A DNA stretch of 64,000 nucleotides, from positions 20,036-84,035 of the forward strand of contig CDMY01000412.1 of assembly GCA_001179505.1 (NCBI GenBank). Reading direction: 5' to 3'. The DNA is from Vitrella brassicaformis CCMP3155 (Eukaryota > Protista > Chromerida). Of the stretch, positions 27,453-35,666 are shown piece after piece; position 1 is the stretch's first letter, and each line of letters opens with the position of its first letter. The notes below the pieces were generated by a model. The model did not search any database. It was given only the letters and a program-made list of their open reading frames with translations, and had not been told where the DNA came from. The position numbers and the translations under genes were made by a program.

Positions 27453-30400
27453 TTAATCCCGGTGTCCCTGATTGTATACGTGCACCGCACTCTTGGCCTT
27501 GGCGCGACACACGGGGTAGGTCAGCACCTTCTTCTTGTCCTTCTTGGCCGTATCCTTCATTCGCTCCAAGCACCCTGCACACGCCACACATGTGCATACA
27601 CGACACTGTTCATTGATCGACCCCCATACGCACATACGTACGTACCCTTGCAGAGGCACTGGTGTCCGCACGGCACGAGTGCAATGTCATTCGGCTCCGC
27701 CAAACACACCACACACGTCGTGATGGTTTTGTCCTTTCCGCCGCCTTCGGCGTGCTTGGCCCGTTCCTCCTTTAGCTGTGCCTGCATGTCAGCGATCATC
27801 TTGGCGGCGGCCTCCTTCTCTTTGCGCAGCTGCTCGGCCGCCTCTCTGTCTTTTGCCTCCTTTGCTGCGGCGAGGCGGCCCTCCACATCTTTCTGGTAGG
27901 ACTCGTCTCGCAGCTTCATCAGGTGCTCGTTGGACTGGTCCCTGAGCTGCTTCAGGCGATCCGACTCACTCTTGGCAGACTGCTGGAACTGCATGACGGC
28001 GGGAATTGACGTGAGGCCGTCAAGCTTCTCCTTGGTCAGCCTGAGGAGAACACACAGGCAGGTAGGCAGGCAGATAGACAGTGTTGATAAGTCTTCTCAC
28101 CGATCTGCGTCGCGTTGCCTGAGGTCTTCGTTGTCGTCAATGAGGCCTTGCAGCCTGCTCCTGTATGCGGCCCTCTTGGCCTCGGCCTCGCTAACCGACA
28201 CGATCAACCTGAAACAAACCAGACACGCATACAGAGACATACGTACGATTGTGCGTTCCATCTGTGAGTGTGTTCGGTGCCGTCTTACTCATGGATAACG
28301 GTGTGCACGTCCTCCATGTGTTCTTTAGCCATGGCGATTTTTGCAGCAATGTCGCACTCGGAACGGTCCAGCTCGTCCAGCCATACACGCTCTGTAGCAG
28401 CAGCAGCAGATGGCGGAGGGCTGCAGACATGCCATCACACATATGCAGACGTACGCAAGGGCCGCATGCCTTGTCTGCTGCCGCCCACCTGTCGCTCCTT
28501 GGGGGCATGGCGGGAGGGGGAATGGGAGTTGGGGCTCGGTCATCACTCGAAGGCGCGGTTGGCTGCCCTCCGCTGGCGGCCTGTGAGAGCTCCATCAGCC
28601 GCTGCGACACGTCTGAGGTCATGAGTTGGCGCAGCTCCGTGTCGCGCATGTCGATGGAGCCCTGGAACCGCCGCACATCGTCTGCTGTGGCCTTCAACGC
28701 AAGCTCATCCTCACTCAAACTGATATACACACAAAGGGCAGACAAGGAGAAATAATAGAAACACAGATTTAGGCGCACACGTGTTCCTGCCTGCCTGCCT
28801 GCCTGCCTGCCTACACGGGATTGGCCTCGCGCAGTCTGTCGTTTTCGTCCGTGAGCTGTGCCTCTTGTGCCTCCATCTGGCCGAGCAACTCCAGGACGTG
28901 ACGCAGAGAAGCTTCCAAACTGACGAGCAACAACAGGGCAAGACACACAAAAGCGTCCTTCACATGGAAGAGCACGTTGGCTGTGCTGCGCACCCTGTCT
29001 TCTGCTCCTCTGCAGCGGCGATCTGCCCCTTGAGCTGATCCAATTCCTCAGCCGCCTCCTGGAGCGATGCAGCGATGGCCATCTCAGCCTCACGTTCCTC
29101 GTCGGTTCTGCACACACACAAAACACGACGACACACACTCGAGTTGATACCAGTGATACATACTCACAACCGTGTGGCGTGTGTCACCTGTGGTCTCTTT
29201 CCACTGTTGCTGCTGCTGGTGCTGCCGCTGCTTCCAGTGGTTCTCGATAGCGTGGCCCGCCCTCAAAGGACGACGGGATCTCCTCGAGACCGGCAGGCGG
29301 TGGAAGAGAGACCGAGGCTTCGAAAGATACTGCAGCAGTGGGGCTGTGGTCTTGGTCGTCGCTGGGTGGTGGTTCGCTTGCCGCCCCGTCCTCTTCCCCT
29401 TGCGCACTCCTGTCCGCTGTCGGCAGCCGGTCACCTTCAGACAGGTCTGCAGCCCTCTCGTTGCTTGGCTGAGGTGGACTTGCTGCGGGTGGCAGCAACT
29501 GCACAGATGACTGGAGCGTCTCGGTGTGGTGTGGTGCGGGTAGCGGATCTTCCCTCACCTCAACATCACCACTGCTTCATACCACAGACAGAGAGACACA
29601 GTCGAATAATCTGTGGATGTTGTGAAGGCTGAATGACGTCTGACCTGTCGACAGGGGTGGTGGTAGCATATGACTCGACGGCCGATCCCTCGTGACGCCT
29701 CACGACCATGCCCCTTTTCCCTTTCCTCCTGCGTCGCCTTGCCTGTCTCGTCATCGACAGCTCGCCAGCCTCGTGCTCGTGCTCGTGCCCGGGGAAGATC
29801 TCACATAGGTCCACATGTGAGCAGATGTCAACGCGTCGCCGTCTCACTCCTTCCAGCACTTCGATGAGGGCCTCCTCGCTCGCCGGATGCCCTGACTTCC
29901 GCAGCTGTCTGCTGTAGAACTCGACTGACATAAAGAAGCCATCGCTAAGATCCTCGGGGTCATTCGCATGACCCATGAACAAAGTGAGGCCTTCCCCCAC
30001 TCCGAGCGGCCGACAGGCAAAGCCGACTCCGACGCACGACGATGGATCACTTGGCGGGTACCCCTCAACCAGCACACGAAATTCACGCAGCTGCTCCGCC
30101 ATCTGAGGATAGAGCTCTCGGAACGACGCGTTTTCCGGCAAGTCCACGACCTCTCGACACGCATCAGCGAGAGCACGCGCCCGTGCAACCAGCCGCTCTC
30201 CCACGCCGCCGTCTTGCCATGCCTGGGGGCCCCTCCAGAAGCACACCGGCATGTCCACGACGATGAGTGGGCACCCCGATTCACGAAAGATGGTCAAGTC
30301 GGGTCCCACGCCATCTGCACACCTCCAGCCGAGACTCGCATGCCCGCAAACGATCCGAATGGGATGTCCAATGTGCAGACAGGCCAGCTCGAGCGCCTTG

Positions 30401-33400
30401 CACAGGCCCTGAGGCGTGAGAGACTCCGCCCATGAGGCTGACCCAGCCAGAAGGGCCCATGAGCCTTGCACAAAACCGACTGTGTCCACGGGCCCTTCTG
30501 GCTGAGACCGCTTTTTGCAGACACCCAGCTGCGCGAAACTGATGACAGCGCTTGTAGGCAGGTGGGATGCGGCCTTGACCGAAGCCACCAGCGCCTTGGC
30601 CGCCTTTATTGCCTCTTTGAGGAGCTGCTCCTCGATCGGCCGGGCGGTGTTGTCGCGTGGCTGCGGTGTCGGAAGCGGCGATGATGGGGGCACGACGAGA
30701 GCAGACGACGAGCGTGCCGCACTATCGGACTGGGGCAGATGACACTCTGAAGGCATACAAGAAAGCGTGGACTAAGTGATTGTACGCCCTTCGCCCACCT
30801 TCGTCAAGTCGGTGATCTTGAGATAGCTGAGTGTCAGTCTCAGCACCCTCTGGTACTCGGTCAGGTGCCTGAGCGGCATTTGACTCACAATTGCTCGCAC
30901 GAGAGAGCTGCCGAAAGAAATAAATGGACACCAACCATGAAGATATGTGACGATGAATGAAGGGATGGTGATACGTACATGAGTATTGACGGGGCCGCCA
31001 TCATGGCCACAGCAGCCGCAGTGGGCGGTTGTCGATGCTGGGTGGCTCGTTGATGCTGCTTCGTCACGATCTGCAGGCGTTGCTTCTGGTGTGTCTGCAT
31101 TCGGCTTCCTTTGCGGAACGCGAGCCATACGTGTTACTCCGTCGCACCCATGAAATGGGACAACAGAAAAGCCTGCATGTCAGAGAGAGGAGCAACGACA
31201 CCGATAAACCCTCCCCCTCTGCCTCTCTCCTCATTCGCGTGCACACACCTTGTTGTGATTCATCGCTGGGCAGACTGAAGTGCCCGGTGGCATCATGCCG
31301 TTTGCCTTCCAAATCCATGCAGAGAGGGTTGGCCCAGCCAGCCACCAGATTGCAAAACGAAAACACCGTCTTGTTCTCGATCAGCATGCCCCTTTCGAGC
31401 CCTTGGCAAAGCAACAGCTTCATCATCATGCTCATCGCCGTCGACACGTCGGGAAGAGCGATAGACGCACTCCACACAGAGGGACGGCTCATGTCGCCGA
31501 AGCGACATGCGGCTGCAGGACGATCCCGACGCGCTCACAGCCAGGCACGGACGAGGCCTCCGATATCGCCCTGAGGTGCCGCAAGGCGAAACAAGCTGTC
31601 GAAGGCACCTCCCTCGTGTATTGCAACTGAGTGCCGTTGAGCATTTTCAGCTGGTTGCGCTGTAAAAGGCTCGTACACCGAGACATTCCCTCGCAAATAA
31701 ACCGGACTGACCACACACACACACACACACACACACAACGCATAGACGTCTGTCTGTCTGTCTGCATTTGTACAGCTGCTCGCTCTAGAGTGGACCCATC
31801 GGGCGCCGCAGCGGTCGGTGCAGAAGGAGACCGTCCCCTCTCTTGCACGCCTTGAAAGAAATTCGCCCCATCTGCATGGTAAGCAACTGTTGAGAAGTCT
31901 CTTCCTACTGTGCCGTGCAGCTTGCTTACCATGCACGCCGCGCATATATTGCTGCATCTTCTTAGGAATTTCTCGACCCAAAGACGTGCTCCGCTGCGCC
32001 GAGTTCGCCCACTCGGCCGACGACATCACACCATCGACAAAGCCCCTCCCTGCCGATATCGCCTCCTGAAGCTTCTCGTCTGTCAGATCGGTCGCCCACT
32101 GTGTGTGCTGAAAGCACTGAGCCTCGAAGACGAAGCCGATGACGTCCACACACACCCCATCGATAGACGCCTTCGTAGCCACACTGACTTGGACCGCGTC
32201 GCCCCTGCCCTGCCTCGCCAGTGCCTCCTTTTCTGACTTGGTAATCGCCTTGGCCCTGAGCAGCGCATGCTTGACCGCTGGCAAGGGCTGTTGCGAGTCG
32301 AGGGCGGCTGTACTTGCTGACTGTTCGATGATGGGTACAGAGAAGATAGGATCATCCGGAGTTGCGATTGGGAGCTGCTGTGGATGACTGTTGGTCTCAT
32401 CGATGAACTCGAAGGTCAGGAAGCTCCCCTTTGGTATCGCCTCGTTGCTGAAGAGGCACACAGTAGGGGCAGTCGGGGCTGCAGTGGATGGACTTTGGAG
32501 AACAACCTGAAATACAATCAGCAGTCACTTGATAGAAGGTGGGTCAAGCTTCCTTACAACGCACCTTGGCTGTCAGGTTTGGTTTGTCTGACCGCGTAAG
32601 GAAGCGTGCTGCATTGCCGAAGTATGTGGTGTCAATAGCATGGCCGATTTCGCCGAGACTGACGCACGGGAAGACAGGCAGTCGCTTTTGCACACGCTGT
32701 TCGACTCGACCTCGTAGCTGAGAGGTGGCGATCAGCTCGCCAGCAAGCTGCATCACAAAGACGCCTGCCGGAATCACTTCCTAGACCACAAGATGGCACA
32801 AAAAGGGTTTGCTCACATGTATGACAGCCTTGTGCTCCTCACTTGAGCAATGAGCGAATATCGTTCATCATCTCCTCCCCTTTCCACAGCAACACGCCAA
32901 TGTACTCCGGGAAGGAAATGTAAACTATTAGTACGCATACAAAACGACATGCACCCATACTCGCGGTGTGATTGTTTTGTTGCTCACTCAGCAGGGTACT
33001 GCTCCGTGTTTCCTGCCGTCGGCAGCTTCGTGAAGGCAATGGACTCCTTGGCGTATGTGAACGATATGTCCTGTTCGAAGAAGGGCCTGTGTCTGCATCC
33101 AAGGAGAGGAATCGCCATATCTTCTTGTCCCTGAGAGATTATGTAATCTCAATGAGCAAACCAGGCATTACACAGATATCAACAAGAAGCGAACCTGAGA
33201 GATGTCTTGATCGATATTCCAATCCACAAGCGGCTCCGAAAGCAGAAGCGACACGCTTGCAGGGGGCTATGTTGGTCGACGCCGTCCTCTGGTGGCTCCA
33301 AAGGAAGGTACGCATTGACAAGCTTGCCACGCATACTTGTGGGGATGGGCAGAATGCGAACGCTGTCATCCATGGCCAGATGGAGCTGGAACGGAAAATG

Positions 33401-34875
33401 CAGCTCCTGAAAGAAATACAAAACCAAGCGGATCCGTCTCTCATCCGATATGATCTCGTCTCATTCCCTCAGTCTCACTGGACGGGGATAGAAACGGTGC
33501 TCCATTTGCTGTCTCTCGCGCCACTCCCTGAGCCGCTCATGACTGCTCTCCAATAGGCAGTCAAAAAGGGCTTTGAAGCACAGAAAGCCACCACCAGAAG
33601 TTGACAGCTCGTGAAAACACCCATCGAGCGGCGATGCGACGACCACTCGATGCGGCCGTCCAGACGTGCATCGATGCTGCTCCTGGCTCTTGGCGAGATC
33701 CAGGACGAAGGGTGGTGATTCGGGTGATGGCATGCGGTCGTCATTGACTGCAGCAATATAACCATATTGTGTGGTATTGTTTTCTTGTGTGGGACGTGTG
33801 TGTCACCTGGAGGTCTCCAACCGGAATCGTTAGGCAAAAAAGACAGAACGAACTTCCAGCAGCCCTTGCCGGAATGGTCGGATGTCCTGAAGGCGTCCTC
33901 AACGCAATAGTGACCATCATATCGAAAGCCATACCTGCAATACGAAGAGAAGAGACAAGCACTCGCATTTGATGCTTCTGTTGCTCATGTATTCCCTATT
34001 GCTCTCTCACCTCGGTGCAACCTCTGAGCGCGTCTCGAAGCATCGGATGACCCTCACGTGCATGCCGCTCACGAACGAATGCAGCATAGGTTGAGCATGT
34101 ACATCCCTGCCGTCTGCATCGTCCCTCACTGCATAAAGGATGCGGTCTCCCTTGTCGTCGTGACCATCATCATTGACCAAGACACACGTGCATATCTTGA
34201 TCATGGTGTCGCCGAAACGAACACTGACGACTCCATCCTCTTTGTTGGTAACGCCCGTCAGCCGGAAAATGTGTGGGAATGAGAAGATGGTGCCGGGGGC
34301 AACACCCACTGTATGGTAAGGGGCGGGCTTCACGCGAGGCATGAGAGGGTCCAGCCACTGTGCGATCTTCTCCTCAACGCTGTCTGCAGCTGCCTCCACT
34401 GAGCTGAGGTCGCTGAGGTCAGGGCAGCTCGCCAGCTCTCGCATAAACTTGCTCTCGATGAATGGCACTCTTGCCTCTTTGGAGAGAAGCATGTAGCGGT
34501 CGAACTCCTCACCCATCAGCACTGAGCCTGCATGGAACAGCAAAGCTGAAGATCTGTAACAAGTCGTCGATTCCCTTCCCTACCTGAATCTGAATCGATG
34601 TCCGTCTCCTCGAGAGGGAGATCAGGTCGAGTGGCCTCATCAGCATGATCATTGGTTCTCTCGCAGTCATCCACGGTGTCGTTTGCTTCACATAAAGGGC
34701 CCGGCTGAGAGGCGGACGGCCTTCTTGAATCAGCCCCATCGCGTGCAGCTCCTGACTGATCCTCACGTGACTCATCGCGTGCACCTGCGAGCTTTTTTTT
34801 GCATTTACGCTCGTACAGAAGATCCGTTGATCCCGGATTCTTTCCCCCGGATTCGCTCTTCAAGTTTCGTGTCAT
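27453..34875 (-). CDS. SRA-YDG + degenerate pre-SET/SET + UIM + coiled coil + RING-HC protein (SUVH/UHRF1-like hybrid)
   Basis: SRA: GVAPGTIF...DDKGDRILY...HVRVIRCFE...APRYGFRYDGHYCV...GCWKFVL. Pre-SET start: DISQGQEDMAIPL...FTYAK. SET: IPAGVFVMQLAGELI...IDTTYFGNAARFLTRSDKPNL...IPKGSFLTFEF. UIM: EEREAEMAIAASLQE. RING: CVVCLAEPNDIALVPCGHQCLCKGC...YPVC. All exons can be joined in frame through GT-AG introns. The domains are well supported; the single-gene model is less certain. Confidence 0.75.
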
Positions 34876-34884
34876 ATCACGACC

Positions 34885-35666
34885 ATGATGAAGCTATCTG
34901 CTGTCTGCCTGCTGTGTGTGGCGGCCCTCGTGTCCGCTGCTGCCGAGTCGCATCCCTTGTCGGTCGTTGAGGGTTCACACCACTTTCTGGAGATGAAGAG
35001 GGACCTGCAGGACCGTGTGCCCATGCCCATGCCCATGCCGAAACCTCAGCCTGAAGATGACGGCAAGGAGGTACGCAGGACAGAAAGGAGGGCCAGCAAA
35101 CTGCTGTTGTGTCGCGGGATGGGACCACTGTGTGTGTGTGTGTTTGTGTCAGATGAAGAGGGACCTGCAGGACCGTGTGCCGATGCCCGTGCCGAGGCCT
35201 GAGCCTGAAGATGACGGCAAGGAGGTAGGCGGAGGGAGCCAGCAAACTGCTGCTGTGTCGGCCGAATGAGACCACTCTCTGTGTGTGTGTGTGTGTGTGC
35301 CTGCGTGTGGCAGAGTGGCGGTCCCGCCCGTGCGCTCCAGGAGCCTGACAACAAGCCCCTGCCGGAGCCCAAGCCCAAGCCCGTCGAGGCAGCCCCCGAG
35401 GGCGTCTTCCAGCCCATGCCCGTTCCCATTCCCGACGTGAGAGAGTGATGACACGCACAGAGAGCCACGCTGTCACTTGACCTCTGCCTTGTGTGTGATA
35501 TGATCAGGGCCGCCTTCGCGGGCTGAAAAAGCTCAAGGAGGCCGGTGAGCCCAGAGAGGACCACATACACATTTTGTGCTCATTCCATTCGTCTCTGTAT
35601 GTGTTTTCAGATGTCCCTCGCCAGGATGAGGATGATCCCATGCCCAAGCCCTGCCCCGGCTGCTAG
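34885..35666 (+). CDS. Small secreted Pro-rich repeat protein with RxL/KR motifs
   Basis: Signal peptide MMKLSAVCLLCVAALVSAAA. Five exons in frame: 34885-35070, 35153-35224, 35314-35436, 35508-35544, then the last exon to stop 35666. Units are MKRDLQDRVPMP...PEDDGKE (twice), RALQEPD and RLRGLKK; the protein ends PMPKPCPGC*. Confidence 0.85.

What the first reader, a model, noticed from the sequence alone, without database searches (positions are those of the whole stretch)
32400..33200. The SET domain looks catalytically dead and the pre-SET zinc cluster is missing
Seen: the canonical RFINHSCxPN reads RFLTRSDKPN. The ELxFDY motif with the catalytic Tyr reads FLTFEF. GWG reads RYS. No post-SET CxCxxxxC follows. 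The pre-SET start DISQGQE..IP...FTY is present, but the 9-Cys cluster that normally follows is absent. Established: NHS and the terminal Tyr are needed for SAM binding and catalysis, and Arabidopsis SUVH2/SUVH9 are inactive SRA-SET adaptors. Inference: an independently derived pseudo-methyltransferase scaffold.
Basis: partly seen in the sequence, partly recalled or inferred. Interest (0 to 1): 0.7.

Follow-up and report, generated by a model that had tools for sequence, protein, structure and literature searches.

The report
Dead SET domain fused to RING ligase
An alga related to malaria parasites carries a histone-methyltransferase-like domain that keeps its shape but has lost every part needed to methylate, much as two plant proteins have, and here it is joined to a ubiquitin-ligase tail; a one-base frameshift just upstream leaves open whether this copy is still made.

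Summary
The stretch is on the minus strand, in the Vitrella brassicaformis gene whose public product is CEM11255.1 (1791 aa).

- **Dead active site.** The SET fold is recognisable: Pfam 27.5 bits, and an AlphaFold core with pLDDT 80-97 and Z 14-16 to solved SET domains. But GWG reads RYS, the Tyr of EYxGE is Leu, NHSC reads TRSD, and the catalytic Tyr is Phe. These positions are invariant in 112-120 of 114-120 SET homologues.
- **No zinc clusters.** The pre-SET interval has 1 Cys, against 12 in a canonical paralogue. There is no post-SET motif.
- **Splicing cannot restore it.** The NHS site lies in the middle of an exon, and the flanking introns sit at positions conserved in the paralogues.

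New points:
- The genome holds four SRA-SET genes, two canonical-looking and two degenerate. The decay therefore happened inside this lineage, with substitutions different from plant SUVH2/9.
- The SRA base-binding pocket is also degenerate.
- The dead SET lies in the same exon as the start of a tail (UIM, coiled coil, RING) that belongs to a RING-ligase gene family. Other members of that family lack SRA and SET.
- A 1-nt frameshift upstream of SET is hidden in the annotation by an implausible intron.

RNA evidence could not be obtained. The verdict is a real pseudo-methyltransferase, a new variant of a known kind. A scaffold role is inferred, not shown.

The parts
27456..34775 (-). Span of the annotated coding sequence of CEM11255.1 / A0A0G4FE57 (P0001, 1791 aa, 24 exons)
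   Evidence: P0001 was retrieved with the exon at 34013-34525 and named. It was mapped exactly onto the window. Pfam on the whole protein gives SAD_SRA 116-250, SET 445-554 and zf-C3HC4_3 1727-1765.
33832..34312 (-). SRA (YDG) domain in two exons (intron 34010-33935). The structural core is kept but the base-binding pocket is degenerate.
   Evidence: Pfam gives 35.7 bits, E 8.6e-9. The best solved relative is SUVH9 (4nj5), E 8.7e-4. GGY...YTGQGG of SUVH9 aligns to ND--...YAVRDD here. The canonical paralogue C356 keeps GGYDDD...YYVGEGG.
33262..33266 (-). Run of five C where the reading frame shifts by one base relative to the paralogues
   Evidence: Homology to paralogue C508 runs in one frame up to ...GVDQHSP (tblastn E 7.5e-9). 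It then continues in another frame as SLLLSEPLVDW...DISQ (60% identity over 20 aa, E 1.9e-5). The annotated bypass intron 33336-33206 removes sequence with coding-like codon usage. Its acceptor scores -3.6, for a sum of 3.1 against 9-24 for 20 other introns of the gene.
33195..33255 (-). Exon piece encoding ...SLLLSEPLVDWNIDQDISQ, the first half of the pre-SET start
   Evidence: homologous to C508, C356 and C897.
33131..33194 (-). 64-nt GT-AG intron splitting DISQ|GQE. It is absent from the paralogues and flanked by the 9-bp direct repeat ATCTCTCAG.
   Evidence: The paralogues read D(A/V)SQGRE without interruption. The sequence is unique in the genome. Codon score is negative in all frames.
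32988..33130 (-). Exon with GQEDMAIPLL...FTY...IAFTKLP: the start of the pre-SET region, with a single Cys
   Evidence: The following intron (32987-32925, phase 2) is at the position conserved in C508 and C356.
32843..32924 (-). First SET exon. RYS at 32863-32855 replaces the GWG AdoMet loop.
   Evidence: Alignment to ASH1L and to the paralogues. Gly is found in 112/114 homologues at both positions.
32565..32780 (-). SET core exon. QLAGE (32750-32736) stands for EYxGE, and RFLTRSDKPN (32606-32577) for RFINHSCxPN.
   Evidence: Pfam SET E 4.5e-3 for the exon alone. PDB phmmer to SETMAR gives E 7.3e-5.
32393..32506 (-). Last SET strands. FLTFEF (32422-32405) stands for ELTYDY, with the catalytic Tyr replaced by Phe.
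   Evidence: This is the end of the confidently modelled core, P0001 429-560.
31931..32392 (-). Same exon, continuing without a stop. It has no post-SET Cys motif and holds the first conserved blocks of the RING-family tail (P0001 581-714).
   Evidence: The ORF is continuous. It is 58% and 39% identical to the collinear paralogue at C989:155548-156019. Codon usage is coding-like, +0.19.
27456..29106 (-). UIM-like motif, coiled coil and C3HC4 RING finger at the C-terminus of the annotated protein
   Evidence: Pfam zf-C3HC4_3 E 6e-9. Paralogues at C770 (87%) and C989 (68%). The UIM and coiled coil were read by eye.

Best explanation
The stretch encodes the pre-SET remnant and SET domain of a lineage-specific SUVH-like (SRA-SET) paralogue of Vitrella brassicaformis. 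The beta-fold and its pseudoknot framework are kept. Every element needed to bind AdoMet and transfer a methyl group is replaced: both Gly of GxG, the Tyr of EYxGE, the Asn-His of NHSC and the catalytic Tyr. Both zinc clusters are gone. It therefore cannot methylate lysine (shown at sequence level; about 0.9). It arose by duplication of a canonical SRA-preSET-SET-postSET gene inside this lineage, independently of plant SUVH2/9 (inferred; about 0.8). In this copy the dead SET is joined, within one exon, to a member of a RING ubiquitin-ligase family (shown at DNA level). The likeliest role is a non-catalytic chromatin-docking or scaffold module that brings an E3 ligase to chromatin (inferred; about 0.4). 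Whether this copy still makes a SET-containing protein depends on an unresolved 1-nt frameshift upstream.
For: Motif replacements agree across three independent alignments. Pfam SET and SRA both score above their gathering thresholds on the public protein. The AlphaFold core has pLDDT 80-97, with Foldseek E 1e-8 and VIA Z 14-16, rmsd 1.9-2.5 A over 120-135 residues, to solved SET domains. Fourteen of 22 near-invariant SET columns are kept; of the 7 lost, six sit in the AdoMet-loop, EYxGE, NHSC and catalytic-Tyr motifs. That pattern is not what uniform decay gives. Cys counts are 1, 3 and 12 in the C412, C508 and C356 paralogues. There are four SRA-SET paralogues, two canonical and two degenerate, with shared intron positions and phases. 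The degenerate sister C508 looks intact. The SET C-terminus and the first tail blocks lie in one uninterrupted exon, and the tail is collinear with a paralogue at C989 that lacks SRA and SET.
Against: A one-base frameshift relative to all paralogues lies at 33262-33266, and no well-scoring intron restores the frame. No RNA evidence could be obtained. No orthologue was found in any other organism, so selection could not be measured. The structure model was driven by an alignment of active SET domains, so it shows compatibility with the fold, not proof of it. The SRA pocket is degenerate, so DNA-methylation reading is doubtful. The link between exon 10 and the later exons passes through about 530 nt without coding signal.
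Confidence: 0.55

Rival explanations
1. Recently broken gene. The frameshift at the C5 run is real and not rescued, so translation from the SRA start stops about 25 codons later. The dead SET and tail are then an untranslated relic (or are made only from some other start). The 'pseudo-enzyme' in this copy would be on its way to being a pseudogene.
For: Both frames around 33264 are homologous to the paralogues. The segment removed by the annotated intron has coding-like codon usage. All frame-restoring introns score 3.1 or less, against 9-24 for real ones, and the annotated one is 131 nt long next to an 11-nt exon. The assembly is Illumina/velvet with ICORN correction, so homopolymer errors should be rare (PMC4501334). 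The annotators used Augustus, which keeps frames open (PMC4501334).
Against: About 1420 codons downstream stay open, with canonical splice sites at every mapped junction and coding-like codon usage. Any break must therefore be very recent. A consensus error or a weakly used intron is not excluded.
Confidence: 0.3
2. Artefact of the gene model: correct splicing would restore NHS, the catalytic Tyr or the Cys cluster.
For: The gene is intron-rich, and one annotated intron is doubtful.
Against: RFLTRSDKPN lies in the middle of a 72-codon exon, flanked by residues homologous to the paralogues. FLTFEF lies 33 codons into a 191-codon exon. The three introns around the SET exons are at positions and phases conserved in C508 and C356. 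My own reading and the public model agree at all these junctions. No Cys-rich open frame exists in the introns.
Confidence: 0.02
3. Still an active methyltransferase, with an unconventional active site or needing a partner subunit.
For: Activity of SUVH2 was once reported and then disputed (PMC2582956). The fold and the RF...PN pseudoknot framework are kept.
Against: Four residues invariant in 115-120 of 116-120 homologues, plus both loop glycines, are all replaced at once, and both zinc clusters are missing. SUVH2/9, which are less degenerate, do not bind AdoMet (PMC2582956).
Confidence: 0.03
4. The dead SET has no role of its own. It is a passenger linker that came along when an SRA-containing gene fused to the RING-ligase gene.
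For: The fusion point is only about 25 residues after the last SET strand. This part has no orthologues and evolves fast.
Against: The sister paralogue C508 keeps a similarly dead SET as the C-terminal domain of an apparently intact gene without any tail. Structural columns are selectively kept.
Confidence: 0.1

Closest known systems
Arabidopsis SUVH2 / SUVH9 (inactive SRA-SET adaptors of RNA-directed DNA methylation)
   Same: SRA followed by a SET domain that has lost the RFxNHxCxPN consensus and the post-SET region. Those proteins do not bind AdoMet or methylate histones (PMC2582956). SUVH9 (4nj5) is the best solved match of this SRA domain.
   Different: SUVH2/9 read CYxSHSxxPN (His and Ser kept), have a pre-SET region (PMC2582956), which from recall still carries its zinc cluster, and have an SRA that binds methylated DNA. 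Here RF is kept but NH reads TR, the catalytic Tyr is Phe, the pre-SET Cys cluster is gone, the SRA pocket is degenerate and a RING tail is attached. Origin is inside the chromerid lineage, not the land-plant clade (inferred).
KYP/SUVH4, SUVH5, SUVH6 and the Vitrella paralogues on contigs C356 and C897 (canonical SRA-preSET-SET-postSET H3K9 methyltransferases)
   Same: Same domain order, same SQG(R/Q)E pre-SET start and FTY block. Intron positions are shared with the C356 and C508 paralogues; the C897 splice sites were not mapped.
   Different: Those keep NHSC, the catalytic Tyr and CxCx4C, and C356 has 12 pre-SET Cys; C897's pre-SET is only partly Cys-rich by eye. This copy keeps none of them.
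UHRF1 / plant ORTH (VIM) proteins (SRA plus RING E3 ligases)
   Same: An SRA domain and a C-terminal RING finger in one annotated polypeptide. A chromatin-directed E3 ligase is a possible function.
   Different: Pfam found no UBL, tandem Tudor or PHD. A dead SET sits in between, and the SRA lacks the stacking Tyr and the GxGG of the 5mC pocket. A published survey lists UHRF1 as not detected in Vitrella (PMC10538959, supplement).
Green-algal SRA-SET proteins without a detectable Pre-SET (class IV-1B, Chlorella and Micromonas)
   Same: SRA directly followed by SET with no Pre-SET domain call (PMC5725981).
   Different: That paper does not report whether their catalytic motifs are intact. It lists no RING tail among 17 Su(var)3-9 architectures in Archaeplastida.

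Membership tests
SET-domain lysine methyltransferases, SUV39/SUVH class | SET fold | tested here: met
   Pfam PF00856 27.5 bits against a cut-off of 22.4. AlphaFold core pLDDT 80-97. VIA Z 14-16 to Set1, SET8, MLL1, EZH2, ASH1L and SETD2.
SET-domain lysine methyltransferases, SUV39/SUVH class | GxG AdoMet-binding loop | tested here: not met
   It reads R-Y-S. Gly is found in 112/114 homologues at both positions.
SET-domain lysine methyltransferases, SUV39/SUVH class | NHSC motif of the pseudoknot (AdoMet binding; the Cys is a post-SET zinc ligand) | tested here: not met
   It reads T-R-S-D. N 120/120, H 120/120, C 119/120.
SET-domain lysine methyltransferases, SUV39/SUVH class | Catalytic Tyr of ELxF/YDY and Tyr of EYxGE | tested here: not met
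   Phe at 556 (Y 115/116) and Leu at 462 (Y 120/120).
SET-domain lysine methyltransferases, SUV39/SUVH class | Pre-SET Zn3Cys9 cluster | tested here: not met
   1 Cys in 58 residues, against 12 in 115 in paralogue C356. The own-genome Pre-SET scan matched only C441 and C356, not this locus, and the exon and whole-protein Pfam scans gave no Pre-SET hit.
SET-domain lysine methyltransferases, SUV39/SUVH class | Post-SET CxCxxxxC | tested here: not met
   No Cys in the 36 residues shown after FLTFEF, and none for about 80 residues by my reading of P0001. C356 has CRCGQPGC and C897 has CFCGSSKC.
SET-domain lysine methyltransferases, SUV39/SUVH class | Methyltransferase activity | not testable with these tools
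   Needs a biochemical assay.
SUVH2/SUVH9-type inactive adaptors | SRA domain N-terminal to a SET domain with a degenerate NHxC and no post-SET | tested here: met
SUVH2/SUVH9-type inactive adaptors | Retained pre-SET zinc cluster and the clade motif CYxSHSxxPN | tested here: not met
   It reads RFLTRSDKPN and has 1 Cys. The motif is taken from PMC2582956.
SUVH2/SUVH9-type inactive adaptors | Orthology to the land-plant clade | not tested
   No plant sequences could be brought in by reference. Paralogy within Vitrella argues against it.
SUVH2/SUVH9-type inactive adaptors | SRA binds methylated DNA | tested here: inconclusive
   The pocket residues GGY and YTGxGG are replaced. Binding itself is not testable here.
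UHRF1 / ORTH-VIM SRA-RING E3 ligases | SRA and RING in one polypeptide | tested here: inconclusive
   This holds in the public model. The junction between SET and the start of the tail is inside one exon. But there is a frameshift between SRA and SET, and a weak bridge between exons 10 and 12.
UHRF1 / ORTH-VIM SRA-RING E3 ligases | PHD (and UBL or tandem Tudor) reader modules | tested here: not met
   No such Pfam hit at E up to 1.

The most novel reading that the evidence does not exclude
One polypeptide unites SRA, a dead SET, a UIM, a coiled coil and a RING. That would be a chromatin-directed E3 ligase built on a SUVH skeleton, in which the dead SET (perhaps still gripping a histone tail) and a degenerate SRA dock the ligase on chromatin. 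It would be a functional analogue of UHRF1/ORTH, assembled independently in an alveolate that a published survey lists as lacking UHRF1.
Probability: 0.2. Interest if true: 0.75.

Novelty: new variant of a known kind. Interest (0 to 1): 0.45.

Why it matters
It would be a second, independent case, far from plants, of a SUVH-type methyltransferase turned into a non-catalytic module. This suggests the SRA-SET unit is useful as a chromatin-docking device even without enzyme activity. I found no paper describing SRA, SET and RING in a single reading frame, although the SRA domain is named after its separate association with each. The case also exposes an annotation problem: a frameshift hidden by an invented intron and an 11-nt exon in the public model. 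The practical weight is limited. It is one orphan gene in one alga, and expression and function are not shown.

Tried and rejected
- AlphaFold on the single sequence failed (pLDDT 32).
- Alignments of the long protein with paralogue exon fragments (A1, A5) were scrambled. I did not use them as search profiles, so no family-wide SRA-SET search or tree with plant SUVH proteins was made.
- Homologue searches found nothing beyond the protein itself: the SRA N-terminal exon against 1.84 billion representatives, residues 100-600, the whole length, and the ESM Atlas for residues 900-1262.
- The idea that the 64-nt intron at DISQ|GQE belongs to a repeated 'introner' family was rejected, because the sequence is unique in the genome.
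- A resemblance between intron 32987-32925 and the Cys remnant of C508 was judged chance, because that intron sits at the conserved paralogue position.
- My own 56-nt frame-restoring intron (33311-33256) was rejected on its splice score of -6.6.
- I did not search with a joined spliced model of my own. Exons were searched one by one by reference, and the public protein P0001 served for whole-protein work.
Full report
**Source and gene.** The window is contig C412 (20036-84035) of a 72.7-Mb genome in 1064 contigs. A search with the exon at 34013-34525 against 1.84 billion protein representatives returned one protein, P0001. It has 1791 aa and is 100% identical over the query. It is CEM11255.1 / A0A0G4FE57 of Vitrella brassicaformis CCMP3155, named only 'RING-type domain-containing protein'. 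The gene is on the minus strand.

**Gene model.** My own reading of the sequence gives GT-AG introns of 56-76 nt. Exact mapping of P0001 shows that the public model uses the same junctions at every exon from the pre-SET start to the end of the SET domain. I did not search with a joined model of my own. Exons were searched by reference, and P0001 was used for whole-protein work.

- RFLTRSDKPN is at 32606-32577, FLTFEF at 32422-32405, and RYS at 32863-32855.
- The pre-SET start reads ...DISQ (ending at 33195), then a 64-nt intron, then GQEDMAIPLL...FTY (from 33130).
- HMMER alignments to solved SET domains place TRSD under NHSC, RYS under GWG and FEF under YDY.
- In an alignment with 120 SET homologues found with a profile of the three paralogues, the replaced positions are nearly invariant:
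  - Tyr of EYxGE 120/120 (here Leu)
  - Asn 120/120 (Thr)
  - His 120/120 (Arg)
  - Cys 119/120 (Asp)
  - catalytic Tyr 115/116 (Phe)
  - both loop Gly 112/114 (Arg, Ser)
- Splicing cannot restore these residues. The NHS site is in the middle of a 72-codon exon, with homologous sequence on both sides. The three introns around the SET exons are at positions and phases shared with two paralogues.

**The fold is kept.**
- On the whole protein, Pfam SET scores 27.5 bits (cut-off 22.4) and SAD_SRA 35.7 bits (cut-off 30.7).
- With the 125-row alignment, AlphaFold2 models residues 429-560 at pLDDT 80-97. The single-sequence run was useless.
- Foldseek gives E about 1e-8. VIA-align gives Z 14-16 at rmsd 1.9-2.5 A over 120-135 residues to Set1, SET8, MLL1, EZH2, ASH1L, NSD and SETD2.
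- The model rests on an alignment of active enzymes, so it shows compatibility with the fold rather than proof.
- The pattern of residue retention is more telling. Of 22 near-invariant columns, 14 are kept, one is conservatively changed and seven are lost. Six of the seven sit in the AdoMet-loop, EYxGE, NHSC and catalytic-Tyr motifs. Even decay would not spare the structural columns in this way.

**Zinc clusters are gone.**
- Between the SQG start and the first SET strand this gene has 1 Cys in 58 residues.
- The paralogue on C508 has 3 in 88, including a CxxC remnant. The paralogue on C356 has 12 in 115.
- After FLTFEF there is no Cys in the 36 residues shown, and by my reading of P0001 none for about 80 residues. 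C356 has CRCGQPGC and C897 has CFCGSSKC at that place.

**A family of four SRA-SET genes.** Own-genome searches with Pfam SRA, Pre-SET and SET models and with the SET core exon led to three more SRA-SET genes.

| Copy | AdoMet loop | EYxGE | NHSC site | Catalytic motif | Post-SET |
|---|---|---|---|---|---|
| C356 | GWE | EYVGE | NHSC | ...SY | present; 12-Cys pre-SET |
| C897 | GWG | EFAGE | NHSC | LTYDY | present |
| C508 | KWE | EVAGE | RHSE | ...SCF | absent; stop 36 codons after SET |
| This gene (C412) | RYS | QLAGE | TRSD | FLTFEF | absent |

- C356 and C897 look active. C508 is degenerate like this gene.
- Exon by exon, this gene is somewhat closer to C508 than to the others. The two share IDTxYFGNAARF, loss of the EYxGE Tyr, Phe at the catalytic Tyr, and loss of both zinc clusters.
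- I infer that inactivation began before these two copies split. C508 seems intact, so a dead SRA-SET has been kept as a gene for a long time.
- The substitutions differ from plant SUVH2/9, which read CYxSHSxxPN and keep the pre-SET (PMC2582956). This fits independent origin. A tree with plant proteins could not be built here.
- SRA-SET without a Pre-SET call also exists in Chlorella and Micromonas (PMC5725981).

**The SRA pocket is degenerate too.** Its best solved match is SUVH9, E 8.7e-4. The core blocks (VRVIR, FRYDG, WKF) are present. The GGY and YTGxGG blocks are not. They read ND-- and YAVRDD here, while C356 keeps GGYDDD...YYVGEGG.

**DNA methylation in this alga.** Vitrella has cytosine-5 methyltransferase-like genes. 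A published survey lists a DNMT4-like and a DNMT2 gene, with UHRF1 and HELLS not detected (PMC10538959, supplement). Whether the alga has 5mC is not recorded there.

**The tail.**
- Residues 524-714 are one exon (32506-31931) without a stop. It holds the last SET strands (FLTFEF, 551-556) and, from residue 581, blocks that are 58% and 39% identical to a gene at C989:155548-161960.
- That gene is collinear with P0001 from residue 581 to the RING finger: middle domain 38%, UIM 77%, RING exon 67%.
- A further paralogue at C770 matches residues 1390-1791, with up to 87% identity.
- Neither locus has SRA or SET.
- The exon end after ...GVH, phase 1, recurs in at least one of the two C989 repeats, and probably in both.
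- So at DNA level a dead SRA-SET module is fused to the N-terminus of a member of a RING-ligase family.
- The next link is less sure. The 530 nt between 31930 and 31403 show no coding signal, and the two annotated bridging introns score 10.2 and 8.1, at the low end of the range.

**A frameshift hidden by the annotation.**
- Homology to C508 runs in one frame through ...YLPLEPPEDGVDQHSP. It then continues in another frame as SLLLSEPLVDWNIDQDISQ. The shift is at a run of five C, 33266-33262.
- The public model removes 33336-33206 as a 131-nt intron and keeps an 11-nt exon.
- The removed piece has coding-like codon usage (+0.23).
- The acceptor scores -3.6. The intron's total is 3.1, against 9-24 for 20 other introns of this gene, and no alternative frame-restoring intron does better.
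- The assembly is Illumina, velvet and ICORN, and the gene models come from Augustus with RNA-seq hints (PMC4501334). An assembly error is possible but not likely.
- If the shift is real and not rescued, translation from the SRA start ends about 25 codons later, and the SET and tail are not made from that start.
- About 1420 downstream codons remain open with good splice sites, so any break is recent.

**Most likely mechanism.** The domain is a pseudo-methyltransferase (about 0.9) that arose within the chromerid lineage (about 0.8). Selective retention of structural residues, an intact sister gene with the same defects, and recruitment into a fusion with an E3 ligase all point to a non-catalytic docking or scaffold role (about 0.4 for this copy today). 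The main rival is that this copy has just been broken (about 0.3). Restored motifs through other splicing, or residual activity, are each very unlikely.

**Limits.**
I went on with other tools, so there is no read evidence for expression, splicing or the C run.
- No orthologue outside Vitrella was found, so dN/dS could not be computed.
- The splice and codon scores come from small training sets taken from this gene itself.

Noticed in passing
window 33262-33336 (minus strand): One-base frameshift at a C5 run relative to all paralogues. The public CDS hides it with a 131-nt intron (33336-33206) that has a very poor acceptor, followed by an 11-nt exon (33205-33195).
   Followed up: yes
window 33131-33194 (minus strand): A 64-nt intron that splits DISQ|GQE, absent from the paralogues C356, C508 and C897. 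It is flanked by the 9-bp direct repeat ATCTCTCAG, which supplies both splice junctions. It looks like a recent intron gain by insertion with target duplication. The sequence is unique in the genome.
   Followed up: partly
L011 (G000:C356:128500-136500), L013 (G000:C897:189500-197500), L012 (G000:C508:13500-22500): Three further SRA-SET genes. C356 and C897 look catalytically competent (NHSC, catalytic Tyr, post-SET). C508 is degenerate like the window's gene (RHSE, Phe, no post-SET, 3 Cys) but seems intact and ends 36 codons after SET.
   Followed up: yes
window 33832-34312 (minus strand): The SRA domain has lost the GGY and YTGxGG blocks, which from recall of the UHRF1 literature line the 5-methylcytosine pocket. 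Its structural core is kept. The exons of this SRA did not even reach the hit list of the own-genome Pfam SRA scan.
   Followed up: partly
L020 (G000:C989:154500-164499) and L021 (G000:C770:168000-177999): A multigene family of coiled-coil plus RING proteins (84 six-frame matches to the last 171 residues at E up to 1). C989 is collinear with P0001 from residue 581 to the end and carries two tandem copies of a 'QHTQWA' block with no Pfam family.
   Followed up: partly
window 31403-31930 (minus strand): About 530 nt between the SET/tail exon and the next coding-like exon show no coding signal in any frame and hold (CA)n and (GTCT)n microsatellites. Annotated exons 11 and 14 score as non-coding, so this part of the public model is doubtful.
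   Followed up: partly
window 34775-34885: The start of this gene (annotated ATG at 34775, or an upstream in-frame ATG at 34875) lies only 10-110 nt from the ATG (34885, plus strand) of a divergent gene for a signal-peptide, Pro-rich repeat protein. This is an extremely compact head-to-head pair.
   Followed up: no
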